Shown here: piece after piece, positions 49,729-64,000 of the stretch
How positions within the stretch are numbered: position 1 is the first letter of the stretch
Layout: each line of letters begins with the position of its first letter
IMG/VR virus record: IMGVR_UViG_3300029893_000001
Location: 310,001 to 374,000 of that record
DNA: 64,000 nt
Direction: 5' to 3' (one strand)
Notes under the pieces: model-generated
Seen by the model: the letters and a program-made list of their open reading frames with translations, nothing else
Databases searched by the model: none
Told to the model about the DNA's origin: nothing
Translations under genes and position numbers: made by a program

Positions 49729-49905
49729 GCCCCAAAATCCATTTTGGATTTTGGGGCGTGAAAAACCCCCGGAGGGTTTTTCACTGGTTTTTGCAAAGCA
49801 AAAACCAACGCATTTTGCCGGGTAGGCAAAATGCGAGGCCCATTTTGCTCCGGGCAAAATGGGCGGGAGGCCGTTCGCTGGATTTTCCCCGGAGGAAAAT
49901 CCAGC
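49729..49905. repeat. array of six near-contiguous perfect inverted repeats
   Basis: Stems of 10-12 bp with 3-5 nt loops at 49729-49757, 49758-49784, 49785-49807, 49809-49835, 49838-49864 and 49877-49905. Confidence 0.92.
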
Positions 49906-49946
49906 CCTTAACGGCCGACTGGCCCGGGGCTTTTGCCCCGGGCCGG

Positions 49947-50204
49947 TCAGTGGCAGGACACCCAGAATCCGGGCCGGACCATGACGGCCCGATTGACCCG
50001 GCGGGTGACGTGCGCCCCGTACCGATTGCACGCGGCCTGCGTTTCGGCGAGGAGCGCATCCCCGCTCGACGCTTCCGAGCGGGGCGTCGAGGAATACTCG
50101 ACGCGGGCCGGCGTCGTCGCGCCGCAGCCCGAGGCGAGCAGCACGATGCAGACGAGCAGGAGCGAGAAGAGGCCAGCGCCGAGAGCCTTGATTTCGTCCA
50201 TCAT
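49947..50204 (-). CDS. small putative lipoprotein
   Basis: Hydrophobic signal ending LLASGC; promoter motif at 50228 and GGAGG. Confidence 0.65.
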   Translation of the reverse strand: MMDEIKALGAGLFSLLLVCIVLLASGCGATTPARVEYSSTPRSEASSGDALLAETQAACNRYGAHVTRRVNRAVMVRPGFWVSCH

Positions 50205-50309
50205 TATTCGGTCCTCCCTTGTGCCGACTAGTATCGGGTGGGTTCGCTCCTCTTAAATGGAGAAGCCCCCGGGCATCCGCCCGGGGGCTATTCCCTTGTT
50301 GCCCGGAAA

Positions 50310-50786
50310 TCAGCCGGGCAACAAATCGTTCAGCTCGTCGAGGAAATCGTCGACCTCCCCGTCCGAAGCCTCCGCGGGATCCGGGGTCGGCTCGGGAGCC
50401 GGAGCGGGGGCCGGCGCCGCCTTCGGAGTCGCCTTCGGTGCGGCCGGAGGCGCCACCGGAGCCGCTCCGCCGAGGCTCGACAGATCCAGATCGTCGATCC
50501 CCAGGGACAGCGCCGGAGCGCTGGCCGGCGGAGGGGTGGGCGCAGCCTTCGGAGCCTCGGGAGCCTTCGCGGCGCCCTTGCCCTTGCCCTTCGGACAGCC
50601 CCGGGCGTTGTGCCCCTGCTCGCCGCAGGTGCCGCAGGTGTAGGTCGGGGCCGGAGCCGCCATCACCGCCGCCGTGGCCAGCGTCGAGATGGGAACGACC
50701 GCGAAGCCCATCGCGCTCAGCGCCCGCACCACCTTGCCGAACTGCTCGTCGGTCATCTTGTCGGTCATCTTCTTGCTCATGATCAT
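50310..50786 (-). CDS. CCHC zinc-knuckle protein with Pro/Ala linker and acidic tail
   Basis: CGTCGEQGHNARGC; tail DGEVDDFLDELNDLLPG; promoter motif at 50823. Confidence 0.75.
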   Translation of the reverse strand: MIMSKKMTDKMTDEQFGKVVRALSAMGFAVVPISTLATAAVMAAPAPTYTCGTCGEQGHNARGCPKGKGKGAAKAPEAPKAAPTPPPASAPALSLGIDDLDLSSLGGAAPVAPPAAPKATPKAAPAPAPAPEPTPDPAEASDGEVDDFLDELNDLLPG

Positions 50787-50850
50787 GATTCCTTTCCGGC
50801 GAGGCGTCCCTCGCCTCATTTCCTAGTATCGAATGGGTTCGTTTGGCCGA

Positions 50851-50943
50851 CTAGCGCCGCTGACGCTCCGCGTGACGCCGCGCCAACTCGGCGCGGGCCT
50901 CCTCGATCGCTAGAATCTCGTCCACGTCCAAACCGTCGTACAT
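50851..50943 (-). CDS. 30-aa peptide MYDGLDVDEILAIEEARAELARRHAERQRR
   Basis: Promoter motif at 50968 and GGAGG upstream; below the ORF-track cutoff. Confidence 0.6.
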   Translation of the reverse strand: MYDGLDVDEILAIEEARAELARRHAERQRR

Positions 50944-51050
50944 GGGGCAAAAACCTCCGTTCGCCGTCTAATATCGGCCGGGTTCGCCCAATTGACATTT
51001 CGAGAGTAGCTTAAACGGGCTTTGGCCCGGGTTTCCCCGGGCCGCCCGCC

Positions 51051-51467
51051 TCACGCCGCCTTCGTACGGGCGGCCAGCTTGGCGGCGACCGCCTTGCTGT
51101 ACGCCGCCGCCTTCTCGTAGACCGCCGCCGCCAGGTGCAGATCGAGCCGGCCGATGCTCGACCCGAGGCACACGTGGCCCTCGGAGGGCACCCCGAGCAC
51201 CAGCTTGTTCCCCTGGCCGCAGATCCACCGCTGGAGACGCTGCCGGTTGCCGCTCGACGCCTTGGCCACGAAGACGTCGTGGACCGCGATGCGCGCCGGG
51301 CCCGGCGTCCCGTCCTCGCCGTGCATCGAGCGGAGCACGATGCCGAAGGACTTCACGCCCTCCCCGGCGGAGCCGACCTGCGCGCCGGTCGCGGCGTCCA
51401 GGTGGAAGACCAGGGCGGGGGCCAGCGGGAGATCGCGGGTGACGTCGTACGTGTTCTTCTTCGCCAT
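51051..51467 (-). CDS. hypothetical cassette protein
   Basis: Promoter motif at 51513, hairpin-TTTAA at 51011-51043. Confidence 0.7.
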   Translation of the reverse strand: MAKKNTYDVTRDLPLAPALVFHLDAATGAQVGSAGEGVKSFGIVLRSMHGEDGTPGPARIAVHDVFVAKASSGNRQRLQRWICGQGNKLVLGVPSEGHVCLGSSIGRLDLHLAAAVYEKAAAYSKAVAAKLAARTKAA

Positions 51468-51538
51468 GATTCACCATTCTTTCTGGGGCGCCGTGCCCCG
51501 TCGTTGTACCGACTAGTATTGTCAGGGTTCGGAAAACT

Positions 51539-51672
51539 TGGCGGAGTCACATCGATGCATGGGTGGAGCCCGTGTCTCTGTGCAAGTGACTCGCTCCCGA
51601 CGAGTATGTCCCTACGTGCAGCTTGCCGGTAACGTAGAGGGAGACCGCCGGGCGGCTATCATTCCTCCGCCA
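51539..51672 (-). ncRNA. candidate structured ncRNA (~135 nt)
   Basis: Directly downstream of the promoter motif at 51677; ends pair (TGGCGGAG/CTCCGCCA); nested stems; no credible ORF. Confidence 0.45.
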
Positions 51673-51743
51673 TTCACTACTATCAGCCGGGTTCAAATCC
51701 CTCTTAAACGCGAGAAGGCCCGGGGCTTTTGCCCCGGGCCCCA

Positions 51744-51941
51744 TCACCCGACCTTCCGAATCGGGGCGACGATGACTCGACTACGCAGCTCGCGCCGCTC
51801 TCGGAGCTTGCGGATCTGCAAATCGAGAAGCGCAATCGTGGCATCGAGCATTTCCCTTTCCTCGGGATCTTGCTCCCTCACACGCTTGCGCAGCGCCTCC
51901 GCTTTCTCACAGAGGAGTGCACGAATGACATGATCGTTCAT
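51744..51941 (-). CDS. hypothetical cassette protein
   Basis: Promoter motif at 51959, GGAGG, hairpin-TTTAA at 51704. Confidence 0.7.
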   Translation of the reverse strand: MNDHVIRALLCEKAEALRKRVREQDPEEREMLDATIALLDLQIRKLRERRELRSRVIVAPIRKVG

Positions 51942-52247
51942 TATTCACCTCCCACCAACTACTATCGAGCGGGTTCAATTGCTATTCGGGAGTAGGGTCA
52001 CGCGGAAATAGGAAAATGCCGACCAATTAATTTTGACCCATAAGTGGTAAAGTATGTAACCGCTCGTTCACACATTCTCACGCTTAAGTACGTATACGCT
52101 CGCAGCCATTGCGAGCTTGCTTGTACCCACTGCGAAATAGCCTAATAAGGCATGTACGCTCGCAGCCATTGCGAGCGGGGCGGGGCGTTAAAAGGCTACG
52201 GGCCCCAGAGGGGCCCTATCTCCTCGCAGCCGTTGCGAGAAATGGTC

Positions 52248-52478
52248 CTAGTAGTCCATCCGTCCGCTCGGAATGGGACCCGAGCCGAGCAGGTAGGCCA
52301 GCGCCTCGACCCACGCCGCTCGTCCAGCGGCCAAGTGAGACCTCAGGACGAAAATGCTTCCCAACGCTCCGACTTGCAGATCGAGAGCAAGTCGAGCCTG
52401 GTGCTCGTGGTAGCGTGCCGAGCCGACCGCTAGAGCAGCACGAGCACACTGATCACCGAAATCTTTCTCCGTGGCCAT
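52248..52478 (-). CDS. hypothetical cassette protein
   Basis: Promoter motif at 52496, GAGGAGG. Confidence 0.65.
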   Translation of the reverse strand: MATEKDFGDQCARAALAVGSARYHEHQARLALDLQVGALGSIFVLRSHLAAGRAAWVEALAYLLGSGPIPSGRMDY

Positions 52479-52569
52479 CGTTGCCTCCTCGCCGATTATT
52501 ATCAGCTGGGTTCAATTCGTGCGCGGTTAAATGCGTAACGGCTGCGAGGAATCTCGCAGCCGCTGCAAA

Positions 52570-52729
52570 CTCCCAAAGGGAAACTGGAATCCGTACTCAA
52601 TCACTTGTCCGACTTCGTTGTCGGGGTGTCTTTCGGGACCACACGATTCCCGCTTCTACGCCGAAGCTCCACGAAAGATCGTATGTTTCCAGCGTCCCTT
52701 TGGGAGCCCGATTTTTCGGTGAATCGGGC
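52570..52729 (-). ncRNA. candidate structured ncRNA (~160 nt)
   Basis: 12-bp plus 6-bp closing stem (52570-52589 / 52687-52706) with internal hairpins, preceded by hairpin 52706-52729. Confidence 0.5.
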
Positions 52730-52756
52730 GAACCGTTCTCGCAGCCGTTGCGAGAA

Positions 52757-53095
52757 TCAGGCGGCCGTGCCGAGCACCTTGCCCATCGACAGGAACCGGC
52801 CCTTCTCCCCGCGGAGCCTCAGGCGCAGATCCCCGCTCTCGTGGGCGTCCCGGATCTTGTCGCCGAGGCTCACCCGCACCCCCGCCTGCTTGCCCTGCTT
52901 CCTCAGGAACTCGCGGGCCTCCTCCGCCTCCTGCTGCTGCGCCTGCTGCCGCTCCTTGAACTGGCGGCGGGACTTGGCCTCGCGCTCCTTCGCCTTGCGC
53001 TCCTCGGAATCCTGCCAGAAGCGGCGCTTCACCTCCGCCGGGTCGAGGCGGCGGGTTCCGGGGACGAGCGTGGTGCGGGTCGCGTTCGTGGTCAT
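52757..53095 (-). CDS. hypothetical cassette protein (charged coiled coil)
   Basis: Promoter motif at 53131, AGGAGG. Confidence 0.7.
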   Translation of the reverse strand: MTTNATRTTLVPGTRRLDPAEVKRRFWQDSEERKAKEREAKSRRQFKERQQAQQQEAEEAREFLRKQGKQAGVRVSLGDKIRDAHESGDLRLRLRGEKGRFLSMGKVLGTAA

Positions 53096-53220
53096 GATTA
53101 TTCCTCCTGGGCCGGAGCCCGTTGCCCCGACTAGTATCGGCCGGGTTCGGCCGACTAGGGAATTAAACGCGCAACGGCTGCGAGATTTCTCGCAGCCGTT
53201 GCTTGTGTAGAGTCAGTGGG

Positions 53221-53403
53221 TCAGGGGATGCTGACCTTCGCCTCGACCGTCGCGGAGTCGAGATCGATGGCCTCGCGGCACGAATCCACGTCCACGATGT
53301 CATCGTTACCCACGAGCACATCCCACACGAGAGATTCCGCCTGCTGGGGACTCTCGGCCGTGACTTTCACCGTCACGGTCACAGTGAACTCCTGATCTTC
53401 CAT
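53221..53403 (-). CDS. small acidic cassette protein
   Basis: Promoter motif at 53423; cassette flanked by 19-bp direct repeats. Confidence 0.7.
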   Translation of the reverse strand: MEDQEFTVTVTVKVTAESPQQAESLVWDVLVGNDDIVDVDSCREAIDLDSATVEAKVSIP

Positions 53404-53451
53404 TTTGCATTTCCCTCGCTAACTATTATCCGCAGGGTTGCTTGTGTAGAG

Positions 53452-53730
53452 TCAGCCCAGGTCGAAGGGGTACTCCGAAGTGACGTCGCCCCACAGACGA
53501 TCGTCGTCGCCGTAGTAGTGGTGCGTGGCCGTCTCCGGGATCACCGGATTCTCCCGGTCGTCGTTCCTGTAGACACAGAAGCGCTCCCCCGGGCAGCAGT
53601 CGCCCAGGAAAAGCATTCCCGCTCCCATCAGGACGATCGTCTCGGCCGGCGTTCCCTGCGGGGCCACGAAATGCACCACGGTGACGTCGCGGTCGCTTTC
53701 GTAGCGCACGGAGTAGTCGTTGACGTTCAT
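53452..53730 (-). CDS. hypothetical cassette protein
   Basis: Promoter motif at 53751, GAGGAGG. Confidence 0.7.
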   Translation of the reverse strand: MNVNDYSVRYESDRDVTVVHFVAPQGTPAETIVLMGAGMLFLGDCCPGERFCVYRNDDRENPVIPETATHHYYGDDDRLWGDVTSEYPFDLG

Positions 53731-53850
53731 TCGGCTTTCCTCCTCAGCGACTATTATCGTCGGGGTTCACGTCCGACACGAAAAGCGCGTTAAATGAAAC
53801 AACGGCTGCGAGAAATCTCGCAGCCGTTGCGTGCCTTGGGAACTTTGGAA

Positions 53851-54195
53851 CTACAGGACCACCCATCCCCAGAAGACGGCCCAGGCGATGAAGCGGATCG
53901 GCCAGCGGGTCCAGGAGTCATTCTGCCAGAGGCAGAGCAAAATCCAAGTGACCCCGAACGCCGGCCAGAGCGTATTGAACCACGGGATCACCTGGACGAT
54001 TCCGCACCAGATCCAGTACGTCAGCAGGAAGCACGTGGAAATGTTGCAGAAGAACTCCACCCAATCCGAGATTTCCATCTCGTTGTGCGGGGTGTAGATC
54101 GTCCGGCCCGTCTCGTGGTCCCTGTAGACCTTGTACGTGGCGCGGAGCGGGCGGATGCTCGGCTGGAGCCGGCGGATATTCTTCGGGTTGGGCAT
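53851..54195 (-). CDS. Trp-rich membrane protein
   Basis: Promoter motif at 54214; three hydrophobic segments. Confidence 0.7.
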   Translation of the reverse strand: MPNPKNIRRLQPSIRPLRATYKVYRDHETGRTIYTPHNEMEISDWVEFFCNISTCFLLTYWIWCGIVQVIPWFNTLWPAFGVTWILLCLWQNDSWTRWPIRFIAWAVFWGWVVL

Positions 54196-54290
54196 GGGTC
54201 GTCTCCTCGCTGACTATTATCAACAGGGTTCTCGCAGCCGTTGCGAGAAATTAAAGTAAGATGGCCCCGGGTTTCCCCGAGGCCCTCTTT

Positions 54291-54677
54291 TCATCCGAGC
54301 GGCTGACTGAGAGCCACCGCACGGCGTCGAGCGTGGATCGGATTGCTCTTCCAGAAGCGAGCCCAGAAATCGCGCTCCGCTTGCTTCGCCTCGTGCTCAT
54401 TCCTGTACTGCAATTGAACGAGCAGATCGGCGTATTCCCCATCCCACTTGGGGTCGTACTCCAGCGACTCACGAACGAGCTGGAATCCCTCCGTTTCGAC
54501 GACCGCCTCGGCCCGGAGCGCCCGGAGTCGGTACGGGACGAATCGGAGGAGCGCCTCCCGATAGTCAGCGTCGTTTGTGATGAATCGGCTCGCCTGTCGG
54601 AGCCAGTCGGCAGCCGACTGTTGCTCTTTCATGACTCGCCGATACAGCACCTCGGAGAACGGGATGATTTCTGCCAT
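54291..54677 (-). CDS. hypothetical cassette protein
   Basis: Promoter motif at 54696, GGGAGG. Confidence 0.7.
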   Translation of the reverse strand: MAEIIPFSEVLYRRVMKEQQSAADWLRQASRFITNDADYREALLRFVPYRLRALRAEAVVETEGFQLVRESLEYDPKWDGEYADLLVQLQYRNEHEAKQAERDFWARFWKSNPIHARRRAVALSQPLG

Positions 54678-54759
54678 TCAACCTCCCTTCGCCGATTATT
54701 ATCAGCAGGGTTCTGTGCGGCCGTGAATGTCCTTAAAGCACGAAAAGGCCCTTGCTAGG

Positions 54760-54915
54760 GCCCTTTCGCGGGTCATTTCGGCAAAAGCTGACCAGGCTCG
54801 GAATACCAAGGCACGTGGTCGTGTACCTTGGTTAGCCTTGCCCCTTTTCGAGTCCATTATTGGTGGCTCGCCTTACGGGTGGGAGGGTGCAGCCCGGATG
54901 GAAACGGAACGAGAA
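54760..54915 (-). ncRNA. candidate ncRNA cassette (~160 nt)
   Basis: Between the promoter motif at 54922 and hairpin-TTTAA at 54733; no SD-led ORF; 10-bp stem ACCAAGGTAC/GTGCCTTGGT and others. Confidence 0.45.
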
Positions 54916-54958
54916 CACCATTTAGTATCGCCAGGGTTCTCGCAGCGGCTGCGAATCC

Positions 54959-55159
54959 CTAAATCCCGATCCAGTAGTTGTCCAGGTCGCTCAGCTTCAC
55001 GCTGGTGATCTCGGGATTGTGGTCCGGCAGACGTTGCTTGGCGAGTCGACGGACGTGAACATCGAACTCCTTTTTGTCCCTCGTTCGCGTCAGGACCGTG
55101 AATCTGTCCACCGCCGACTTCCCGTCGACTTCGTAGCACAGTTCGATGAGATACTTCAT
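54959..55159 (-). CDS. hypothetical cassette protein
   Basis: Promoter motif at 55178, GAGGAGG. Confidence 0.7.
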   Translation of the reverse strand: MKYLIELCYEVDGKSAVDRFTVLTRTRDKKEFDVHVRRLAKQRLPDHNPEITSVKLSDLDNYWIGI

Positions 55160-55247
55160 TTTCCGCCTCCTCGCCGAATATTATTGGCAGGGTTCTCGCA
55201 GTGACGGCGAGAATTTAAATTGAGAAAGGCCCCTCGCGGGGCCCGTC

Positions 55248-55466
55248 TCAGTCGTCGCGGAGGCACGGGGTCGGTCCCCCGCAGAATCCGCAGCGCCCCG
55301 GATTGTGGTACGCTGAGAGCACGTGATTGTTGGCCACGTGCTCCGGCTCGAAATAGTCTTCGGTTTCCCGAACTTCCATTCCTTCCGGGGCTTGCTCGTC
55401 GTCGAGGAGACGCACGGCTCGTGCCGTGGTCTTGCCGGGGTTGGCAATGTAGTAGCGGATGGTCAT
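55248..55466 (-). CDS. hypothetical protein, probably leaderless
   Basis: ATG lies 7 nt after GATAAT of the promoter motif at 55472; no SD. Confidence 0.6.
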   Translation of the reverse strand: MTIRYYIANPGKTTARAVRLLDDEQAPEGMEVRETEDYFEPEHVANNHVLSAYHNPGRCGFCGGPTPCLRDD

Positions 55467-55491
55467 GCCGAATATTATCGGCAGGGTTGAA

Positions 55492-57245: not shown

Positions 57246-57351
57246 CTCGCCGTCGTGGTCTACTATCAGGAGGGTTCAACTCCTCTAATTAAACAGAGAA
57301 AGGGGCCTGTGGCCCTTCTCCCTGTTTTGGAATCTCGCAGTGGCGGCGAGT

Positions 57352-58279: not shown

Positions 58280-58555
58280 TCAGGATTCCACGATCTTGCC
58301 GGCGTCGAGATCCACGAAACCGATGTGGACGTACTTCCAGCCCGTGCTTCCAATGAGCGTGGGCGAATCCGGGAGACGCTCCGGAGCCTCGGCGAACGTG
58401 CAGCCCTCTCCGACGAGCAGGAACGCCAAGTGGCCGAATCCAGAGGAATCCACCGCCGCGTTTTGGTAGGCTGCCCAGCGAGTTCGCTCGCGCTGTCGAG
58501 CGCGCATTTGGCTCAGGACTTCCTCGTCGATTTGGAGATCATTGGTCGTCATCAT
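58280..58555 (-). CDS. hypothetical protein
   Basis: Coupled downstream of the 58561-58932 gene. Confidence 0.65.
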   Translation of the reverse strand: MMTTNDLQIDEEVLSQMRARQRERTRWAAYQNAAVDSSGFGHLAFLLVGEGCTFAEAPERLPDSPTLIGSTGWKYVHIGFVDLDAGKIVES

Positions 58556-58560
58556 GTCCC

Positions 58561-58932
58561 TCAGTACAGGTTCACGTAGACGCTATCGCCCACGATTTCC
58601 ATCGCGTCCCGGACCTTTTGGGCCGCGTTCATTTCCTCGACTTCGCAGCGATCCCACGTCGCTCTCTGGTCGAGCACGTCGCGGAGAGCAGCCGGCGTGA
58701 CGAGCACCACTTCGGTGTCGCCCCAGGTGAACGCGTTGGTGATGAGTTCCGAGACGATCTCGTATTCCTCTTCGGAGAGGAACTCCGAGAGCGTGATGAA
58801 CTGGCACTCGAAAAGCGTCGGTCGCTTCATGGCCTCCTTTCGGTCGCAGTCTTCGCAGTTGCCTGGACCGCGAAACTCGAAGACAGTCGGACTGATTTCC
58901 TGGCCACACGTCTTGCAATGATATTCGGCCAT
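58561..58932 (-). CDS. hypothetical zinc-finger-containing protein
   Basis: Start MAEYHCKTCG after GAGGAG; promoter motif at 58950. Confidence 0.68.
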   Translation of the reverse strand: MAEYHCKTCGQEISPTVFEFRGPGNCEDCDRKEAMKRPTLFECQFITLSEFLSEEEYEIVSELITNAFTWGDTEVVLVTPAALRDVLDQRATWDRCEVEEMNAAQKVRDAMEIVGDSVYVNLY

Positions 58933-59020
58933 GTTTTTCTCCTCGCCTATTATTATCGACGGGGTTCGTGGTAACGACAAACGCAGAATAGGCCCCGAGT
59001 TTCCCCGGAGCCTATCTCTC

Positions 59021-59395
59021 TCACTTGTTCCTGAAGTACGTCTCGTACCCGATGTCCTTGGTGGACATCAGATTGTGCTTGAGATTCATGGACTCGCCGC
59101 TGAGCATGCGGCGCATTTCCTTCTCGCTGACGAAATCCACCCACTTCTCGTCGTGTTCGGGCCGAATCATGTGGTAGTTCTCGGGGTGAGAGCCCGTCGA
59201 ATCGTAGTCGGTCCACTTCATGATCTGTTGCGTGGTCCATCCGACCGCCGGCATTCCGGTCATGTCGTAGCACCCGCGATTGACCAATTCGGTGGCCACC
59301 ACTTCGTGCCCTTCGATGACCAGCTTGACGATCGGCCAGTCCTCGGGATCGAGAACGTTGTCGCTGAGTCGGGCGTAGAGAATCGGCTTTCGCAT
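59021..59395 (-). CDS. hypothetical protein
   Basis: GAGGAGG immediately after hairpin-TTTAA at 59408. Confidence 0.7.
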   Translation of the reverse strand: MRKPILYARLSDNVLDPEDWPIVKLVIEGHEVVATELVNRGCYDMTGMPAVGWTTQQIMKWTDYDSTGSHPENYHMIRPEHDEKWVDFVSEKEMRRMLSGESMNLKHNLMSTKDIGYETYFRNK

Positions 59396-59440
59396 CTTAC
59401 CTCCTCGTTAAACGCGAAAAGGCCCCTTTCGGGGCCTCTG

Positions 59441-59833
59441 CTATTCCTCGGGAGCAAGTAGCAGCATGGTTTCGGCGGCGTGAGTCAGCGCACCCCACTG
59501 GAGTGCTTCCTCCTCGCACACCGCCTTGTACGCGCGTTGAAGTACACGCAGAAGCACACGCTGCTCGAATTGAATCCGAGCCTCGCCGATCATTTCGTCG
59601 AGGGGCGGGCCCTCGTCGTTGTAGTAGGCGATGCACGCCGGCTTCATCTGCGGGAACGTCTCGCAGTACAGCCAGTCGAGCACGCTCTTGTATTCGTCTT
59701 CCCTCGGAGGGGCGATCTTTCGCAGCGCCTTGGCGTGTTTGCTCGTGCGGAGCCACGCCTCGACCTCCGGGAAGAGGCTCGACGTGAGAGGCCCTCGAAC
59801 GACGCAAACGCACACCATCTGGAGAGCACTCAT
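59441..59833 (-). CDS. hypothetical protein
   Basis: GAGGAGG SD just downstream of tRNA-Glu. Confidence 0.68.
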   Translation of the reverse strand: MSALQMVCVCVVRGPLTSSLFPEVEAWLRTSKHAKALRKIAPPREDEYKSVLDWLYCETFPQMKPACIAYYNDEGPPLDEMIGEARIQFEQRVLLRVLQRAYKAVCEEEALQWGALTHAAETMLLLAPEE

Positions 59834-59859
59834 TATTCACCTCCTCGCCATTATTGAAT

Positions 59860-59932
59860 TGACCCCAACGGGATTTGAACCCGTGTTCTCGCCGTGAAAG
59901 GGCGGCGTCCTAGGCCACTAGACGATGGGGCC
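59860..59932 (-). tRNA. tRNA-Glu(TTC)
   Basis: GGCCCCA TCGTCTAGTGGCCTAGGAC G CCGCC CTTTCAC GGCGA GAAC ACGGG TTCAAAT CCCGT TGGGGTC A; promoter motif at 59946; no encoded CCA. Confidence 0.95.
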
Positions 59933-60210
59933 GTGTCCTCGCCGATTACTATCGGCGGGGTTCACTTCTTTCCGTGGGTGGACTCCCACCATTTCAGATA
60001 CTCGTAATCCTTTCGGTCGAGCATCCGATAATAGGACTCGGGGTCCGCGTCGAGTTGGTATTCATTCTCAGCGGCGTTTTGGTCGACGCCAGGAAATGTC
60101 TCCTCGTACCTGACTCGTCGATTTTTCTTACGCTGTTTCTGCTGTCGTCGCCGTCGCATGGGATATTATTCCTCGGGTTAACGCCGAATAGGCCCCGAAA
60201 GGCCATCGGC

Positions 60211-60408
60211 AGAAGCGAATCGCAGTGGGGAGGCCTACAGAGGCGGATAAAGGCAAACCAATACCCGGAACCCTCGGTTCCGACGGGATTCGAACCCGCA
60301 TCACCGCCGCACCTGGTGCCACAGGACGCCCACTAGACAGCTCCGCGTTGGCACTCACGGAACGTTCATCGTAGGTCCCTGTAAGCCGCCCCACTGCGAT
60401 TCGCTTCT
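60211..60408 (-). ncRNA. candidate ncRNA (198 nt) with permuted tRNA-like (YrlA-type) module and kissing loops
   Basis: 20-bp perfect inverted repeat 60211-60230 / 60389-60408 extended by 11 bp; T arm GCGGG-TTCGAAT-CCCGT, loop-closed acceptor CGGAACC-GAG-GGTTCCG, D-like arm; followed by hairpin-TTAA at 60178. Confidence 0.72.
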
Positions 60409-60419
60409 TGGTTATTGTT

Positions 60420-61170
60420 TCCGCAGATTCAGTTTCCTCCGCCCTGCGCTGCGGCTCAATCTGAGTGACCATGAGAAGGGAGTGCAGTATTCGTTAGCCT
60501 CGTTGGAGATAGTGTGCCCTTTGACTGCCGAGGGTGCAATAGCAATCTGCACCTAAACATAGGCCCGGCAATCTACAGACGATAGTCCAGCGAAGCACCG
60601 AACAATGCGTGTAACCTACGCGATGGTCAAACAATCGAGATGAGTACGAAAGGGAGTTAATTGGCGAGTCAAGGCGTCCTCCTAACGAGACTCTTTTGGG
60701 CCAGCTTTCGCTTTTAAGTGGCGTGGAGGTACGACACAATCTGCAACGTCCAGTAGCAGAAGCCCTGCCCTTGTACTCAGAACATTATCCAGCATATGCT
60801 GGAAGCGAATGGCTATGTTCCTTCGCCACCCGTTCCCCTTGAGCCGCCTTTAGCGGACGCTCATTGGTCCTATCGGAAGCCTAGGCACATCTTGCCCAAG
60901 ATTCCAATAGTATCAATTCAATCTCCGAGCGGTCCAGCCAGGGGGACCGATCCCTGCCACGAACTTAGCGGCGGCGCGTCATTCGTGGCTATATAGTCTC
61001 GAAGTGGTTACGACTCTTGCCCGACAAGTGTCGCAGCAATCAACTGGTCCAGGGGAAGGATTCAGTTGAGTAGGTATGCTTAGTTGCTTCTTGGCGGGTT
61101 TCCTACTAAACCCAGCCAGTCATAAGCTGTAGAACAGGAGAATCATTTCCAGTCCTCCGGCTGTGGGATT
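60420..61170 (-). ncRNA. candidate large structured ncRNA (~750 nt)
   Basis: No credible ORF in an otherwise gene-dense region; dense hairpins and long-range stems; strand inferred from neighbours. Confidence 0.5.
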
Positions 61171-61205
61171 CATTAAACGCGAAGAGGGGCCCGAAGGCCC
61201 CTCTT

Positions 61206-61760
61206 CTATGCGTCCACCATCGCCCGACGGCTCCAGTAGAGGATTGCCTTGGCGAAATCCTCCGCCGAATAGGTGGCCGGCGTTCCTCCGGGGAGACCCA
61301 GGAAGTTGCGGGCCATCGCCATCGGAGTCTGGGGCTCCGGCTCCTCGGTGGGGCGGGCGTTGATCGAGACGATCTCCCACTCGCATTCCGTCGAGGCGTC
61401 GTTGCCGAGAACGTCGTGCCTGTAGAGCACGATCTCGACGACCTTCGCGGGAGCCTTCTCGCCCTTCGCACGCACCTCGATGTAGGGCTCCTCGCCCTCT
61501 CGCCGCGCCGAGAACGTCGCCCGGAGCGTCGTCTTCGGAGTGACCTCGATGACGCCACACTTGAAGTAGTGCGCCTGACTCTCGGTCATCGGGATGAGCA
61601 GAACGCCGTCGCGGTAGCCCGGCTTCGCCTCGGAGAACTGCTGCTCGACGAAAGCGATGAGCACATCCCACTTCGCATCGTGGGTGGCGATGAAGTGTGA
61701 GAAGGGGCTCTCCGGCGTCTGGCGACGCACGAAGTCATTGATTCCGATGAGGTTACCCAT
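61206..61760 (-). CDS. DUF3228-like protein
   Basis: INDFVRRQ, PGYRDGV, FSARREGEEP, IVLY, WEIVSIN, PMAMARNFLGLPGG; promoter motif at 61792. Confidence 0.72.
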   Translation of the reverse strand: MGNLIGINDFVRRQTPESPFSHFIATHDAKWDVLIAFVEQQFSEAKPGYRDGVLLIPMTESQAHYFKCGVIEVTPKTTLRATFSARREGEEPYIEVRAKGEKAPAKVVEIVLYRHDVLGNDASTECEWEIVSINARPTEEPEPQTPMAMARNFLGLPGGTPATYSAEDFAKAILYWSRRAMVDA

Positions 61761-61807
61761 GATTGATTCGGCCTCCCTTTGCCTCGCCAAACTACTATCG
61801 ATTGGGT

Positions 61808-62020
61808 TCAGTCCCTCTCGATCGCGGAGAAGTCTCCCAGGTTCCACGTGGTGTGAGTGGGCTGCATGATGCCGAGAACCTGAGTTCCGTAGTTCTTCTC
61901 GTAATCCCAGGTGTTGAAGTCGCCCCGCGACTGAGCGTAGGCAGCGATGACAGCCTCTCGTGGAGAGCACGAAAACGTCTGCTCGTGGCAGGTGGCGAGG
62001 TTGAGGACAGTGGTGAACAT
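61808..62020 (-). CDS. hypothetical protein
   Basis: Start MFTTVL after GAGGAGG following hairpin-TTTAA at 62040. Confidence 0.65.
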   Translation of the reverse strand: MFTTVLNLATCHEQTFSCSPREAVIAAYAQSRGDFNTWDYEKNYGTQVLGIMQPTHTTWNLGDFSAIERD

Positions 62021-62072
62021 GATTGATTTCCTCCTCTCATTAAACGCGAGAAGGGGCCCGAAGGCCCCGTTC

Positions 62073-62490
62073 TTAGTGACTCCAGGAGCGACGCACACCC
62101 TTCGAGAGGCGGCGAATCATTCGCTCCTCCTGAGCGATGACCTTCCTGGCGACCGGATTGAAATCGCGCAGGTCATCGCGCGTTGGGTAGATCCGGTCGA
62201 TGTCCAGTCCGAATCCCCTACCGCTGTGATGGCTGAAGAGACTTACATGACCAGGAAAAGCCATCGTCTCGATGTAGTGTCCAATCACGACTGTCGAGAT
62301 CGTGACGTGCCGGGTCTTGCACCACGTGCGGTACTCCGGACGAAAGAGATCCCAGGACTTCGGGATGCGCCGTCCGTACCACCGGATGATCGGCTGCTTG
62401 AAGACGACCTTCGTGACCCTCTGGACCTGACCGTCCTTGTGGGTGATGATCTCGGTGGAGCGCCGGAGAGCGCCGGAGAATGTTGCTCAT
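62073..62490 (-). pseudogene. cassette gene frameshifted by a 10-bp tandem duplication
   Basis: GCGCCGGAGA x2 at 62460-62479; removing one unit gives a single 135-aa ORF joining ATG 62490 to the 62073-62288 frame. Confidence 0.75.
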
Positions 62491-62608
62491 GATTGATTGC
62501 CTCCTCTGATTGATTGCCTCCTCGCTCAACTATTATCGGCGGGGTTCAGCGTTCTCTTAAACGCGAGAAGGGGCCCGAAGGCCCCTCGTACGCAGCTCAC
62601 TTAGTGAG

Positions 62609-63232
62609 CTAGTTGGTCTCCGAAGGAGGCGGCAGGACAGCCGATGGCCTTCGGGGAGACGCCCACTTTTCCGCGGCCTGTTCGATGTTGCCATCCGTCA
62701 GGGTGCCGACTTCCATCCTGATGAAGTGCATCGCCTCATTTCGGTAACGATCTGCTTCGAGCGAATCGCAGAAGACCTCGACGAGATTCTTCGCGTCGGC
62801 CAGACCGAGGCCGTGCATCTCGCGGGCCTTCTTGATGGCGGGGATCTTCCTGCCAGTGTTGTTCGGACCTCCGACCACCGCCATGAACTTCGCGGCGGGA
62901 TCGAGATCCTTGACGGGGAAGGGGCACTGCTTTCCGATGTTGCCTCGGATGCGATCGTTGTCGTACTTGAGGCGACCGTTCTCCTGTCGGAGCGTCGCGA
63001 TCTCTTCGCGCTGAAGAGCCACGGTCTTGTTCATGTGAGACCACTCACAGACCATCGCCGACGCATCGGCGTGGATCGACTCCAAGAGCGACGAGGCGCC
63101 GAGCACCATCGCATAGATGGGCACCAACACCAGGTTGAAGGGCTCGTCCTCGACCTGTTCCTTGAGACGGTCCGCGGCGTCTCGGACCATCGTCGTCAGG
63201 ATCTCCAGGTTCTTCACGAACGTGTCGTACAT
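62609..63232 (-). CDS. protein with ribosomal L7/L12 C-terminal-like domain
   Basis: RKIPAIKKAREMHGLGLADAKNLVE; GGAGG; promoter motif at 63263. Confidence 0.72.
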   Translation of the reverse strand: MYDTFVKNLEILTTMVRDAADRLKEQVEDEPFNLVLVPIYAMVLGASSLLESIHADASAMVCEWSHMNKTVALQREEIATLRQENGRLKYDNDRIRGNIGKQCPFPVKDLDPAAKFMAVVGGPNNTGRKIPAIKKAREMHGLGLADAKNLVEVFCDSLEADRYRNEAMHFIRMEVGTLTDGNIEQAAEKWASPRRPSAVLPPPSETN

Positions 63233-63625
63233 TACCAATTCCTCCGGGCCAGAAGTTGGCACTTAGTATCGCCAGGGTCCAACCCCTTAAGCAAGAAAAG
63301 GGCGGCCCCGAAGGACCGCCAATTCATCGGTACATGTTGGCTTCCTGATGGGAAGCCCAATCGTCGTTGACGATCTCGGCGAGTTTGCGAGCAACCTGCT
63401 CACCGTACTTCGAGATCCACTCTTGGAGTTGTTCCCCCGAGAGCGGCTTGATCTCGTATCCGACCATCGGGTCGGAAGCCGGAAGAGCAGGGAAAACCTG
63501 CGGCGGGTCCGAGAAGGCAAACTTGGTGGGTTGCATCGTCTCGACGACGGTGGCGATCACGAGATATTCCACTCCATCCAGAGTGAACTCGTGCTCCCTT
63601 TCGGGATAGGTGAAGCTCTTGTGAT

Positions 63626-63976
63626 TCACTCGCCCTCCTTCTGGTTGAGCCGACTGAGACACGTCTCGCAGATGATGACTTCGCCACGCGTCATCATGCG
63701 ACCACCGCAGTCTCCCCGCGGATTGTTGTTCCAATTCACGCAGTCATCCAGAGCGTACAGGCCGGTGACTTCGACAACCTCCGGAGAGGCGTCGCGGTGG
63801 TCGTAGATGCCCAGCTCCCACCGACCGTCGGCCATCTTCTGACCGGTGGTGTTGGACCAGTTTTCTCCGACGCACCACGGCTCCGGGAGAAGTTCCTCGA
63901 CCTTCGTCGGATCGTTCGGACAGATGATGAGGCGCTCGTCGAGATTGATCTCCGTTCGATTCGCCACGTCCAGCAT
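63626..63976 (-). CDS. hypothetical protein
   Basis: 116-aa ORF with C-terminal Cys cluster. Confidence 0.55.
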   Translation of the reverse strand: MLDVANRTEINLDERLIICPNDPTKVEELLPEPWCVGENWSNTTGQKMADGRWELGIYDHRDASPEVVEVTGLYALDDCVNWNNNPRGDCGGRMMTRGEVIICETCLSRLNQKEGE

Positions 63977-64000
63977 GGACTTGAGCCACTCCCGAGTCTG

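What the first reader, a model, noticed from the sequence alone, without database searches (positions are those of the whole stretch)
49900..64000. Modular cassette architecture of the GC-rich early region
Seen: about 23 copies of the promoter motif in 14 kb, many fused to a near-identical leader (GATAATA.TCGGCGAGGAGG), each driving one to three tiny genes or an RNA and ending in hairpin-TTTAA. The 24-nt hairpin GGCCCGGGGCTTTTGCCCCGGGCC is identical at 49921 and 51717. Known: repeated promoter/stem-loop units mediate shuffling in T4-type phages, and SPO1/T5 cluster host-takeover genes behind repeated early promoters. Inference: a recombinogenic host-takeover/anti-defence array.
Basis: partly seen in the sequence, partly recalled or inferred. 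Interest (0 to 1): 0.72.

Follow-up and report, generated by a model that had tools for sequence, protein, structure and literature searches.

The report
Shuffled early-gene cassettes of a jumbo phage
The end of a 392-kb uncultivated subsurface phage's early region is a dense row of about 25 tiny self-contained units (own promoter, one to three unknown genes or an RNA, own terminator), and related phages use the same unit design but mostly different genes in a different order, much like the "mobile regulatory cassettes" of T4-type phages but with an unusual promoter.

Summary
The window is part of a 392,328-bp jumbo phage from subsurface metagenomes. Window 49.9-64 kb holds 23-24 same-strand copies of GAACCC-N4-GATAnTA (30 in the window against 0.15 expected; 76 genome-wide, all on the minus strand). 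About half carry the TCGGCGAGGAGG leader. There are 16 hairpin-TTTAA terminators, and the two 24-nt hairpins are identical.

Related metagenomic phages have arrays with the same layout. Few of their ORFans are shared (7 of about 22, at 40-54% amino-acid identity). The shared ones are in scrambled order, always on the same strand, and each sits behind its own promoter. Homology starts at the promoter and ends at the stop codon. So cassettes are gained, lost and moved.

However, three deletions that co-exist with the full form in the source population all break inside ORFs with 1-3 nt of microhomology, not in the motifs. No circles could be tested.

A host-takeover or anti-defence function is unproven, because nearly all the proteins are ORFans.

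The promoter has a sigma-28-type extended -10 (GCCGATA), an upstream GAACCC element and no -35. Which sigma factor reads it is unknown. The phage encodes a UvsX-like recombinase and a divergent sigma factor, and no site-specific recombinase. Several cassettes hold highly structured RNAs, including a 1-kb one.

The parts
49725..49950 (-). Block of seven consecutive perfect hairpins that closes the array at its downstream end. It includes the 24-nt hairpin at 49,921-49,944.
   Evidence: MFE -147.7 kcal/mol, z = -11.7. A homologous block ends the relative's array (nhmmer E 2.3e-5).
49947..50245 (-). Cassette: promoter 50,229-50,245, then an 85-aa ORF (49,947-50,204) with a signal peptide and a lipobox-like LLASGC.
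   Evidence: The lipoprotein reading is my own inference from the sequence.
50253..50840 (-). Cassette: promoter 50,824-50,840, a 156-aa ORF (50,310-50,780; CCHC knuckle, Pro/Ala-rich, acidic tail), and hairpin-TTTAA at 50,253-50,257.
   Evidence: The leader and ORF start have homologues downstream of the G cassette in L131 and L132.
50851..50985 (-). Cassette: promoter 50,969-50,985, then a 30-aa ORF. This cassette is absent at the same place in L131 and L132.
51011..51694 (-). 'G' cassette with tandem promoters (51,678-51,694 and 51,514-51,530), a 138-aa ORF at 51,051-51,467, and hairpin-TTTAA at 51,011-51,015.
   Evidence: Homologues at 51-64% amino-acid identity exist in four other metagenomic contigs. 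Homology runs from the promoter to the stop codon only.
51704..51976 (-). Cassette: promoter 51,960-51,976, a 65-aa ORF at 51,744-51,941, the 24-nt hairpin at 51,717-51,740, and TTTAA.
   Evidence: A homologue is present in L130 (45% identity).
51977..52513 (-). Cassette: promoter 52,497-52,513, a 76-aa ORF at 52,248-52,478, and a terminator (TTTAA 52,188-52,192). This is followed by about 200 nt of lower-GC non-coding DNA with two identical 22-nt CTCGCAGCCATTGCGAG hairpins 60 nt apart.
52527..53148 (-). Cassette: promoter 53,132-53,148, a 112-aa basic ORF at 52,757-53,095, a structured 3' RNA element at 52,566-52,756 with a 12-bp closing stem, and hairpin-TTTAA.
   Evidence: Fold z = -4.8.
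53163..53768 (-). Two cassettes: promoter 53,752-53,768 with a 92-aa ORF ('C', 53,452-53,730), and promoter 53,424-53,440 with a very acidic 60-aa ORF (53,221-53,403) followed by hairpin-TTTAA.
   Evidence: C has a 54% homologue in L075 and L114.
53790..54231 (-). 'E' cassette: promoter 54,215-54,231 overlapped by the palindrome CTCGCAACGGCTGCGAG, a 114-aa membrane ORF at 53,851-54,195, and hairpin-TTTAA.
   Evidence: There is a 40% homologue in L059 and L114.
54251..54713 (-). Cassette: promoter 54,697-54,713, a 128-aa ORF at 54,291-54,677, and hairpin-TTTAA.
54733..54939 (-). RNA-only cassette: promoter 54,923-54,939, then about 185 nt non-coding and a terminator.
   Evidence: No codon periodicity; fold z = -3.6.
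54959..55195 (-). Cassette: promoter 55,179-55,195 plus palindrome, and a 66-aa ORF.
55215..55489 (-). 'F' cassette: promoter 55,473-55,489 with ATG only 6 nt after the motif (near-leaderless), a 72-aa ORF at 55,248-55,466, and hairpin-TTTAA.
   Evidence: There is a 48% homologue in L059.
55491..56430 (-). Cassette: promoter 56,414-56,430, a 152-aa ORF, a 125-nt spacer, a 60-aa ORF, and tRNA-Met(CAU) at 55,491-55,565.
   Evidence: The ESM Atlas gives a weak GGDEF-like fold lead for the 152-aa protein.
56449..57277 (-). Cassette: promoter 57,261-57,277, a 246-nt leader RNA with an approximately 27-bp closing stem (57,015-57,260), 49-aa and 120-aa ORFs, and hairpin-TTTAA.
   Evidence: Fold z = -5.3.
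57289..58025 (-). Cassette with a degenerate promoter (GATAATA kept, GAACCC lost), a 212-aa ORF at 57,352-57,990, and hairpin-TTTAA.
   Evidence: The protein has no relatives among 5.8 billion sequences apart from identical copies.
58029..58224 (-). Cassette: promoter 58,208-58,224 and an approximately 50-aa membrane ORF.
   Evidence: Its 49% homologue lies right next to the G cassette in L130.
58280..58967 (-). Cassette: promoter 58,951-58,967, then a 123-aa ORF and a 90-aa ORF.
   Evidence: Deletion breakpoints lie at 58,375-58,377 and 58,818.
59021..59963 (-). Cassette: promoter 59,947-59,963, tRNA-Glu(UUC) at 59,860-59,932, a 130-aa ORF, hairpin-TTTAA, and a 124-aa ORF.
59962..60180 (-). 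Cassette: weak promoter 60,164-60,180 (2 mismatches) and a near-leaderless 65-aa ORF.
60181..61176 (-). About 1 kb of non-coding, highly structured RNA. Its 3' domain is closed by a 20-bp stem and holds a tRNA-like arm at 60,275-60,364.
   Evidence: No GC3 periodicity; fold z = -6.5. The only Rfam match is a sub-threshold tRNA hit of 19 bits. A weak possible homologue exists in relative G002.
61173..61809 (-). Cassette: promoter 61,793-61,809, a 184-aa DUF3228 protein at 61,206-61,760, and hairpin-TTTAA.
   Evidence: Pfam PF11539, E 5.7e-10.
61808..62547 (-). Cassette: promoter 62,531-62,547 and a leader with a 16-bp tandem duplication. The gene at 62,073-62,490 is frameshifted by a 10-bp tandem duplication at 62,460-62,479. 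Then hairpin-TTTAA and a 70-aa ORF at 61,808-62,020.
   Evidence: (GC3 0.76 in the shifted frame against 0.48).
62557..63280 (-). Cassette: promoter 63,264-63,280 (1 mismatch), a 207-aa protein with a ribosomal L7/L12 C-terminal-like domain at 62,609-63,232, and hairpin-TTTAA.
   Evidence: Pfam PF00542, E 2.2e-6, 28.3 bits against a cut-off of 25.9.
63324..63976 (-). Two overlapping ORFs (116 aa and 101 aa, 'B'). They belong to a unit whose promoter lies beyond the window, at genome 374,537.
   Evidence: B has a 41% homologue in L075.
58376..61662 (.). Segment missing in a co-existing deletion variant (3,287 bp).
   Evidence: The joint 58,375 to 61,663 appears in three runs at depth 5.9, 9.3 and 13.7, against about 14, 8.5 and 14.6 for the full form. 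It is also absent in contig L027, and contigs L028 and L029 start exactly here.
58819..59815 (.). Segment missing in a second deletion variant (997 bp). It gives an in-frame fusion of two ORFs.
   Evidence: The joint 58,818 to 59,816 appears in runs X1 and X5; breakpoint context.
61883..64000 (.). Window part of a third deleted segment (61,883-64,372; 2,490 bp).
   Evidence: Absent in the 403,515-bp sister contig L027. Loose end at 61,882 in run X3.

Best explanation
The region is the most densely punctuated, downstream end of a roughly 45-kb one-directional (minus-strand) accessory or 'early-type' region of a 392-kb jumbo myovirus. It consists of about 25 autonomous expression cassettes.

Each cassette is bounded by a composite regulatory module with three parts. 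First, a GC-rich hairpin directly followed by UUUAA, which terminates or protects the 3' end of the upstream unit. Second, a 17-nt promoter made of GAACCC at about -22 to -17 plus a sigma-28-type extended -10 (GCCGATAnT), with no -35. Third, in about half of the array units only, TCGGC (which completes a palindrome GCCGA-N6-TCGGC across the -10) and a strong GAGGAGG Shine-Dalgarno sequence.

The payloads are unrelated ORFans of 30-212 aa, two tRNAs and several highly structured RNAs.

Shown: the architecture; its conservation in related phages; and the fact that the cassette (promoter to stop codon or terminator) is the unit conserved, lost, gained and relocated between relatives, always keeping its orientation.

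Inferred: the many short direct repeats (17-32 nt promoter and terminator modules), together with the phage's own UvsX-like recombinase, provide the exchange points, as in the PeSL model of T4-type phages. Transcription is by a bacterial-type RNA polymerase holoenzyme starting about 6-7 nt after the motif. The genes are non-essential early accessory functions. The region also loses DNA by plain illegitimate deletion.
For: Architecture and statistics.

The same layout occurs in relatives. The L075+L059 composite, bridged by L114, is 10,981 bp with 17 promoters, 8 hairpin-GCG-TTTAA terminators and GC 0.59. TCGGC follows 9 of its 17 promoters, against 11 of 23 in our array and 0 of 36 elsewhere in our genome.

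Content and order differ. Only 7 of about 22 ORFs are shared, at 40-54% amino-acid identity. The order in the relative is A B C D E F G and in our genome A D B F E C G, all on one strand. The rearrangements are visible within single contigs (L075: A,B,C,D; L059: E,F,G; L114: C,D,E). L066 and L116 each show one relocated cassette in an otherwise collinear stretch. In L066 the relocated gene sits between two identical promoter copies. In L130 the 58,029-type cassette lies next to the G cassette.

Homology blocks begin at the promoter and end at the stop codon. There are no paralogues inside the array, so homologue assignments are unambiguous.

The recombination machinery is a UvsX-like recombinase (phrog_97, E 4.5e-56). 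There is no tyrosine or serine recombinase.

Regulatory modules fall into local sub-families, which suggests local spread: a 69-nt module in three copies, a 40-nt terminator in three copies, and a 32-nt terminator at 94% identity.

Bacterial-type transcription start geometry: the -10 part equals the sigma-28 consensus GCCGATAA with A-11 (PMC12784957). Three promoters carry the ATG exactly 6 nt after the motif, as expected for leaderless mRNAs. No DFDGD-type RNA polymerase and no PF00562 or PF00940 match were found.

Dispensability: three deletions exist at intermediate frequency.
Against: The only breakpoints resolved to the nucleotide (six, from three segregating deletions) are inside ORFs with 1-3 nt of microhomology and no flanking repeats. 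Recent structural change here is therefore not motif-mediated.

At 40-64% amino-acid identity the older rearrangement junctions cannot be placed to the base. Selection alone would also leave only rearrangements that break between cassettes.

No transcript data exist, so promoter activity, start sites, terminator function and timing are all inferred. No circles or back-joints were seen, although only contigs could be examined.

The relatives' arrays come from metagenomic contigs of uncertain linkage to one genome. Function of the payloads is unknown.
Confidence: 0.7

Rival explanations
1. The repeats are regulatory signals only. Cassette turnover occurs by illegitimate (microhomology) recombination and horizontal acquisition. 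Selection then keeps only products whose junctions fall between transcription units, so the motifs mark breakpoints without causing them.
For: All six nucleotide-resolved breakpoints are non-motif, with 1-3 nt of microhomology. Exact direct repeats are short, at most 24-32 nt. 29-32-nt terminator repeats flank single genes (for example 62,037 and 62,554), yet no corresponding joint was seen in four runs.
Against: Relocated cassettes keep their orientation and their own promoter in every case. In L066 the relocated gene lies between two identical promoter copies, which is the signature expected from insertion by recombination at the promoter. Module sub-families cluster locally. A UvsX-like recombinase is encoded.
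Confidence: 0.3
2. The promoter class is not host-dependent 'early'. It is read by the phage's own divergent sigma-70-family protein (genome 246,996-248,375), possibly delivered or made first. In that case the array is a middle-type regulon.
For: The genome encodes a sigma factor with regions 2-4. The motif has no -35 and an unusual GAACCC element. It is shared by the closest relatives G001 and G002 but absent from more distant G003 and G004, although they keep the sigma gene at about 61% identity. No cluster of canonical sigma-70 promoters exists that could serve as an alternative early class.
Against: The sigma gene lies in the motif-free 190-300 kb structural part of the genome and has no recognisable promoter of either kind upstream. 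If the motif needed this sigma factor, nothing obvious would express the factor first. Phage sigma factors usually serve late genes (established knowledge, for example T4 gp55 and SPO1 gp33/34).
Confidence: 0.35
3. The promoters are read by the host's sigma-28 (FliA/SigD-type) holoenzyme, which would tie early expression to motile host cells.
For: Positions 8-15 of the consensus are GCCGATA(A/G/C). This is the sigma-28 -10 and extended -10 consensus, GCCGATAA at -15 to -8 (PMC12784957).
Against: There is no TAAA-type -35 at the expected distance; nothing is conserved upstream of GAACCC. The host is unknown. The conserved T at -7 is sigma-70-like.
Confidence: 0.12
4. This is an integron-like or other site-specific cassette system in which the hairpin-TTTAA acts as the recombination site.
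For: Cassettes share one orientation, each ending in an imperfect palindrome followed by a conserved short motif.
Against: The genome has no tyrosine or serine recombinase. Every cassette has its own promoter, unlike integron cassettes. TTTAA does not fit the integron core GTTRRRY (established knowledge). Observed junctions are not at TTTAA.
Confidence: 0.02
5. The pattern, or its variation, is an assembly artefact.
For: Repeated modules can confuse assemblers, and the relatives are metagenomic contigs.
Against: Our own order is reproduced in four assemblies from different sources. The deletion joints recur in three runs, and depths add up to the flanking depth. The C-D-E order of the relative is seen in contigs from two samples.
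Confidence: 0.03

Closest known systems
PeSLs (promoter-early stem-loops) of the hyperplastic regions of T4-type phages (Arbiol et al. 2010, PMC2839356; Comeau et al. 2014, PMC4122927)
   Same: Both are composite terminator/promoter modules repeated dozens of times. Both concentrate in regions full of ORFans, with a few copies in core regions, and each typically sits just upstream of one ORFan with a Shine-Dalgarno sequence. Cassette content and order differ between relatives. The phage has a UvsX-type recombinase.
   Different: The promoter is not a sigma-70 consensus: there is no -35 and no AT-rich upstream tract. Instead it has GAACCC plus a sigma-28-like GCCGATA -10. The stem-loop lies upstream of the promoter, separated by a TTTAA motif, rather than inside or overlapping it. 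The region is GC-rich. Payloads include tRNAs and large structured RNAs. The phage is an uncultivated 392-kb jumbo phage not shown to be T4-type. Junctions in the motifs and mini-circles, which define the PeSL mechanism, were not demonstrated, and the recent deletions break elsewhere.
SPO1 host-takeover module (26 genes in the 12.4-kb terminal region; PMC6873191, citing Stewart et al. 1998)
   Same: Both are a cluster of small genes behind repeated strong promoters and strong ribosome-binding sites, arranged in short operons. The genes are individually dispensable.
   Different: SPO1's promoters are host sigma-A consensus and its gene functions were shown experimentally. Here neither timing nor any host target is known. 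No sequence homology was found.
Sigma-28 (FliA/SigD) promoters
   Same: The -10 and extended -10 sequence GCCGATA(A), with A at -11 (PMC12784957).
   Different: The TAAA -35 element is missing. There is an extra conserved GAACCC at -22 to -17 and a conserved T at -7.
Spontaneous deletion of an 'ORFanage' region in a cyanophage (PMC4503421; title and abstract only)
   Same: Multi-kb deletions within an ORFan-rich accessory region arise and persist in phage populations.
   Different: Here the deletions were seen only in metagenomic contigs. Any fitness effect is unknown.
GOLLD/ROOL-type large structured phage RNAs (from my own knowledge, not tested beyond Rfam)
   Same: The 1-kb non-coding, strongly folding RNA at 60,181-61,176 lies in a phage, next to tRNA genes.
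   Different: It matches no Rfam family. Only one weak putative homologue was found.

Membership tests
PeSL-type mobile regulatory cassettes (T4-type phages) | Repeated composite motif of an early promoter plus a stable stem-loop terminator | tested here: met
   24 promoters and 16 hairpin-TTTAA terminators, usually adjacent. Function of either element was not tested experimentally.
PeSL-type mobile regulatory cassettes (T4-type phages) | Promoter matches the host sigma-70 consensus with an AT-rich upstream region | tested here: not met
   There is no conserved -35 or upstream tract. The consensus is tGAACCCTGCCGATAnTA. The host is unknown.
PeSL-type mobile regulatory cassettes (T4-type phages) | Concentrated in hyperplastic, ORFan-rich regions, immediately upstream of ORFans | tested here: met
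   About 1 promoter per 0.6 kb here against about 1 per 8 kb elsewhere. The proteins are ORFans.
PeSL-type mobile regulatory cassettes (T4-type phages) | Indels and replacements between related phages with junctions in the motifs | tested here: inconclusive
   Cassette-level gain, loss and reordering is shown, with homology bounded by the promoter and the stop codon. The divergence is too high to place junctions to the base, and three recent deletions have non-motif junctions.
PeSL-type mobile regulatory cassettes (T4-type phages) | Mini-circles formed by exchange between nearby motifs | not testable with these tools
   Only Logan contigs were available. No back-joints were listed.
Sigma-28-dependent promoter | -10 and extended -10 sequence GCCGATAA | tested here: met
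   Positions 8-15 of the consensus, compared with PMC12784957.
Sigma-28-dependent promoter | -35 element TAAA(G) about 11 nt upstream of the -10 | tested here: not met
   No conservation upstream of GAACCC in 76 sites.
Canonical intrinsic terminator | GC-rich hairpin followed directly by a U-tract | tested here: inconclusive
   The hairpins are strong (-17 to -33 kcal/mol) but are followed only by UUUAA. A consensus scan finds 31 terminator-like sites against 13 expected.
Integron-like cassette array | Site-specific (tyrosine) recombinase and promoterless cassettes with attC sites | tested here: not met
   No PF00589 or PF00239 match in the genome. Each cassette has its own promoter.
Host-takeover / anti-defence gene set | Homology or a demonstrated activity against host processes or defence systems | tested here: not met
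   There were no informative family matches. The only leads are an L7/L12 C-terminal-like domain (28.3 bits) and DUF3228. Activity was not tested.

The most novel reading that the evidence does not exclude
A clade of uncultivated jumbo phages uses a previously undescribed promoter class: GAACCC at -22 to -17 plus a sigma-28-type GCCGATA -10, with no -35. In the array it is overlaid by a palindromic GCCGA-N6-TCGGC operator. The class would be read either by the phage's own divergent sigma factor or by a host FliA-type holoenzyme. These promoter-terminator modules would act as portable recombination handles that move not only ORFans but also tRNAs and new large structured RNAs (the 1-kb RNA at 60,181-61,176 and the long-stem RNAs at 57,015-57,260 and 52,566-52,756) around and between genomes as mini-circles.
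Probability: 0.2. Interest if true: 0.8.

Novelty: new variant of a known kind. Interest (0 to 1): 0.58.

Why it matters
Hyperplastic ORFan regions are where phages keep and exchange their host-specific accessory genes, including counter-defence genes. Outside T4-type phages, the way such regions are built and reshuffled is poorly documented.

This case shows the same design principle in an unrelated-looking, uncultivated 392-kb subsurface phage and its relatives: each small gene carries its own promoter and terminator, and the cassette is the unit of exchange. The regulatory vocabulary is different, built around a sigma-28-like -10 with a novel upstream element.

The result provides a compact, easily scanned signature (17-nt motif plus hairpin-TTTAA) for finding accessory arrays in this clade. 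It also gives a defined set of about 30 ORFans and 4-5 structured RNAs to test, and a natural population with three segregating deletions that already mark which cassettes are dispensable.

Tried and rejected
1. Megablast of the region against GenBank phages found no match.

2. The promoter-plus-leader pattern gave no hits in IMG/VR or in metagenome contigs. Records close to the window's own genome are withheld from these scans.

3. Four relatives found through DnaB (G001-G004) are collinear with our genome from 143 to 351 kb, but all stop short of the array. They have no homologues of array proteins.

4. I looked for an equivalent promoter motif in the more distant relatives G003 and G004 using syntenic upstream regions and k-mer or dyad counts. 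Nothing convincing emerged.

5. A phage RNA polymerase was not detected. There was no PF00940 or PF00562 match and no DFDGD motif in six frames. A very divergent enzyme cannot be excluded.

6. A T7-like reading of the 17-mer, with the start site directly after TA, was rejected. The leaderless ATGs cluster 6 nt after the motif, and the -10 matches a sigma-factor element.

7. The idea that TTTAA is a -35 or UP element was rejected. Its distance to the promoter varies from 7 to 25 nt, while its distance to the hairpin is fixed.

8. The palindrome CTCGCA-N5-TGCGAG as a conserved operator was rejected. It is confined to 52.1-57.3 kb of this phage and is absent from the relatives' arrays.

9. Paralogy between cassettes: none found.

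10. ESM Atlas searches for three ORFans gave no usable lead.

11. Two pattern scans for more homologues of the 1-kb RNA returned only G002 and one chance hit in a coding region. A two-sequence covariation check was inconclusive.

12. The whole 403-kb sister contig could not be reached through handles.

13. A literature search for the accessions found nothing.

14. The integron-like model was rejected.

Full report
**Setting.** The window is bases 310,001-374,000 of a single 392,328-bp IMG/VR virus record that CheckV rates as 100% complete. The same phage, nearly base for base, appears in four places: a sister JGI sample (403,515-bp contig), an NCBI MAG contig (364,980 bp), Logan assemblies of subsurface metagenome runs, and at low depth an independent rock metagenome. 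It encodes a large terminase, a portal, a gp6-like baseplate wedge protein, a DNA polymerase, a DnaB-type helicase and a UvsX-like recombinase. It is therefore a jumbo myovirus with its own homologous-recombination enzyme. No tyrosine or serine recombinase was found. No recognisable phage RNA polymerase was found. One divergent sigma-70-family gene is present at genome 246,996-248,375.

**Checking the observation.** Everything in 49.9-64 kb is on the minus strand.
- The motif GAACCC-N4-GATAnTA with at most 1 mismatch occurs 30 times in the window, always on the minus strand, against 0.15 expected from shuffles. Of these, 23 lie in 49.9-64 kb. There is also a 2-mismatch copy at 60,164-60,180 and a decayed copy at about 58,009-58,025.
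- Genome-wide there are 76 copies, none on the plus strand. There are 20 per 10 kb at genome 360-370 kb, a thinner continuation through 374-392 kb and 0-11 kb, scattered single copies in the replication region, and almost none between 190 and 300 kb, where the structural genes lie.
- About half of the array copies run into (A/G)TCGGCGAGGAGG followed 5-8 nt later by ATG.
- All 16 minus-strand TTTAA pentamers in the array lie 1-4 nt after a strong GC-rich hairpin (-17 to -33 kcal/mol). Only two TTTAA occur on the other strand.
- The 24-nt hairpin is identical at 49,921 and 51,717.
- GC is 0.58-0.67 here against about 0.51 for the rest of the window. GC3 of the array ORFs is 0.65-0.96.

The description is accurate. 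The one qualification is that the motif is the phage's general leftward promoter, not something special to this region.

**Anatomy of a unit.** Aligning the 76 sites gives the consensus tGAACCCTGCCGATAvTA, with nothing conserved further upstream. The core GCCGATA(A) is the published sigma-28 -10 and extended -10 consensus, (-15)GCCGATAA(-8), in which A-11 is flipped out (PMC12784957). With that register, the invariant T falls at -7 and GAACCC at -22 to -17. There is no -35, and a sigma-70 consensus scan finds only weak partners.

Three promoters place an ATG exactly 6 nt after the motif: window 55,473-55,489, genome 350,009 and genome 81,451. Others place it 3-8 nt after. This is what leaderless mRNAs starting about 7 nt after T-7 would look like. 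It favours a bacterial-type holoenzyme over a T7-like polymerase.

In the array, and only there, the motif is followed by TCGGC, which makes the palindrome GCCGA-N6-TCGGC across the -10. This occurs at 11 of 23 array sites, 2 of 17 in the upstream early region and 0 of 36 elsewhere. It also occurs at 9 of 17 sites in a relative's array. It could be an operator for timed shut-off, or a shared descent mark of the modules. This point is inference.

Upstream of each promoter lies the terminator of the previous unit (hairpin, then usually GCG, then TTTAA), at a variable 7-25 nt.

**Payloads.** The payloads are about 30 ORFs of 30-212 aa, with no paralogues among them and essentially no family matches. 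The exceptions and leads are:
- a DUF3228 protein at 61,206-61,760;
- a 207-aa protein with an L7/L12 C-terminal-like domain at 62,609-63,232;
- a probable lipoprotein in the last cassette;
- two small membrane proteins.

One 212-aa protein has no relative among 5.8 billion sequences. tRNA-Met and tRNA-Glu are each embedded in a cassette.

Non-coding stretches show no codon-position GC signal and fold far better than shuffles:
- 57,015-57,260, a leader with an approximately 27-bp closing stem (z = -5.3);
- 60,181-61,176, about 1 kb with a 20-bp-closed 3' domain and a sub-threshold tRNA-like arm (z = -6.5);
- 52,566-52,756 (z = -4.8);
- 54,738-54,922, a promoter-to-terminator RNA-only unit (z = -3.6).

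None matches Rfam.

The array ends in a block of seven back-to-back perfect hairpins at 49,725-49,950 (z = -11.7).

**Relatives.** Contigs found through DnaB (70-86% identity) are collinear with our genome from 143 to 351 kb but all break before the array. The two closest share the promoter at syntenic sites, and the two more distant do not.

A metagenome-wide scan for the consensus 17-mer then recovered many contigs of this clade. They include true arrays:
- L059: 6.9 kb with 11 promoters;
- L075: 4.2 kb with 6 promoters;
- L114: 2.1 kb with 5 promoters;
- L073: 3.2 kb with 5 promoters.

L075 and L059 overlap and are bridged by L114, which comes from a second sample. Together they give 10,981 bp with 17 promoters, 8 hairpin-GCG-TTTAA terminators and GC 0.59. 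The composite ends in a homologue of our hairpin block. The architecture, its GC enrichment and its distal boundary are therefore conserved.

**Cassette turnover.** Only 7 of about 22 ORFs of that array have homologues in our early region, at 40-54% amino-acid identity, and their order differs. The relative has A(389,686) B(373,324) C(363,452) D(374,937) E(363,851) F(365,248) G(361,051). Our genome reads A D B F E C G. All are on the same strand, and C, D, E, F and G sit directly behind a promoter of their own in both genomes. The rearrangements are visible within single contigs, so they do not depend on joining contigs.

In the more sparsely punctuated upstream part, L116 and L066 are collinear with our genome except for one relocated cassette each. 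In L066 the relocated gene lies between two identical promoter copies, as expected if a promoter-bearing circle recombined with a resident promoter.

A five-way DNA alignment of the G cassette (our genome, three short metagenomic contigs with 59-64% protein identity, and L059) shows invariant promoter bases, a conserved leader and ORF, and loss of similarity immediately upstream of the promoter and after the stop codon.

In L130 the neighbours of G are homologues of our 51,744 gene and our 58,029 membrane-protein gene. The latter lies 13 cassettes away in our genome. In L131 and L132 a different small unit replaces our 30-aa cassette between G and the next shared cassette. Gene order is thus clearly not fixed, and the conserved unit is the cassette.

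**Recent events in the source population.** The 403-kb sister contig is about 100% identical but lacks window 61,883-64,372 (2,490 bp) and 58,378-61,662 (3,285 bp). Two other assemblies break exactly at 58,377.

Laying contigs of four runs on 58,001-64,000 shows the 3,287-bp joint in three runs at depths 5.9, 9.3 and 13.7, beside the full form at about 14, 8.5 and 14.6. These sum to the flanking depth. A further 997-bp joint (58,818 to 59,816) appears in two runs.

All six breakpoints are inside ORFs, with 1-3 nt of microhomology and no flanking direct repeat. These are ordinary illegitimate deletions. They show that the cassettes, including the 1-kb RNA and tRNA-Glu, are dispensable in at least part of the population. 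They do not support motif-mediated exchange. No back-joints (circles) were listed, but contigs cannot show rare forms.

**Mechanism.** The most likely picture is a PeSL-like system (PMC2839356, PMC4122927): many short direct repeats of promoter and terminator modules, in a phage that carries a UvsX-type recombinase. Local sub-families include a 69-nt module in three copies, a 40-nt terminator in three copies, and 32-nt terminators at 94% identity. Together these would allow unequal exchange, excision and re-insertion of whole expression units while preserving orientation.

The comparative data fit this at cassette resolution. The nucleotide-level proof (junctions in the modules, circles) is missing, and the rival 'selection filters random breakpoints' remains viable. 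A site-specific, integron-like mechanism is disfavoured.

Who reads the promoter remains open. Candidates are a host primary sigma with an unfamiliar consensus, the phage's own sigma, or a FliA-type sigma.

The host-takeover or anti-defence label is a reasonable analogy with the SPO1 module (PMC6873191) but has no direct support here.

**Verdict.** This is a new variant of a known kind: PeSL-like mobile regulatory cassettes outside the described T4-type phages, with a distinct sigma-28-like promoter and RNA payloads. Interest is moderate to high. The most novel elements are the promoter class and the unexplained structured RNAs.

Noticed in passing
window 60,181-61,176 (-): An approximately 1-kb non-coding stretch with no codon periodicity folds far better than shuffles (z = -6.5). 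Its 3' domain is closed by a 20-bp stem and contains a tRNA-like acceptor/T-arm (Rfam tRNA 19 bits, below threshold). It lies between the DUF3228 cassette and the tRNA-Glu cassette and is removed by the 3.3-kb deletion variant. A weak possible homologue with conserved sequence islands lies at a non-syntenic place in relative G002 (about 21,010-21,339, opposite strand).
   Followed up: partly
window 57,015-57,260 (-) and 52,566-52,756 (-): Two more RNAs share the same build: a long perfect closing stem (about 27 bp and 12 bp) around a 115-170-nt multi-branched core. One sits in a 5' leader and one in a 3' UTR. They could be RNase III-released small RNAs or MITE-like insertions. They show no similarity to each other or to Rfam.
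   Followed up: partly
window 49,725-49,950: Seven consecutive perfect hairpins (10-13-bp stems, many with A/T runs) in 226 nt mark the downstream end of the array (z = -11.7). A homologous block ends the relative's array. This is probably a multi-terminator barrier before the next gene block.
   Followed up: partly
window 62,460-62,530: A 10-bp tandem duplication (GCGCCGGAGA twice, at 62,460-62,479) frameshifts the gene at 62,073-62,490 just after its start. The leader of the same gene carries a 16-bp tandem duplication of SD plus spacer. No variant without the duplications was seen in four runs.
   Followed up: partly
window 54,200-55,232: Three copies of a 69-nt terminator-palindrome-promoter module are spaced exactly 482 and 482 bp apart, although the genes between them are unrelated. 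This is unexplained.
   Followed up: no
window 58,818 / 59,816: The 997-bp deletion matches, within 1 bp, the 996-bp spacing of the two promoters upstream of its ends (58,951-58,967 and 59,947-59,963). Both breakpoints lie about 131-133 nt downstream of a promoter, and the product is an in-frame fusion. This may be coincidence.
   Followed up: partly
window 52,095-57,350: A local repeat family built on CTCGCAGCCGTTG has 13 copies against 0.5 expected. It forms either short hairpins overlapping the promoter's upstream edge (TCTCGCAACGGCTGCGAGAACCC) or long terminator stems. It is confined to this phage and absent from relatives' arrays.
   Followed up: yes
window 62,609-63,232 (-): A 207-aa array protein carries a ribosomal L7/L12 C-terminal-like domain (Pfam PF00542, 28.3 bits, residues 128-166). 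It is a candidate for interference with translation GTPases.
   Followed up: no
window 49,947-50,204 (-): The last cassette encodes an 85-aa protein with a signal peptide and a lipobox-like LLASGC. It is a possible superinfection-exclusion-type lipoprotein (analogy only).
   Followed up: no
genome 246,996-248,375 (L001) and 242,313-243,725 (L120): The phage encodes a divergent sigma-70-family protein with an approximately 240-aa N-terminal extension, and a UvsX-like recombinase. Both lie in the promoter-motif-free part of the genome.
   Followed up: partly
window about 47,350-47,490 (-); L026 20,501-20,639: An Xre-type HTH gene (PF01381) lies shortly downstream of the array and hairpin block. 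It is a candidate regulator for the palindromic GCCGA-N6-TCGGC sites (speculative).
   Followed up: no
whole genome: Array ORFs have GC3 of 0.65-0.96, whereas the rest of the genome averages about 0.52-0.58. The relative's array is likewise GC-richer than its genome (0.59 against 0.53). The compositional contrast is therefore a conserved property of the arrays, not a one-off acquisition.
   Followed up: partly
window 55,497-55,517 and 60,280-60,300: The T-arm of tRNA-Met and the tRNA-like arm inside the 1-kb RNA share a 21-nt segment at 86% identity.
   Followed up: no
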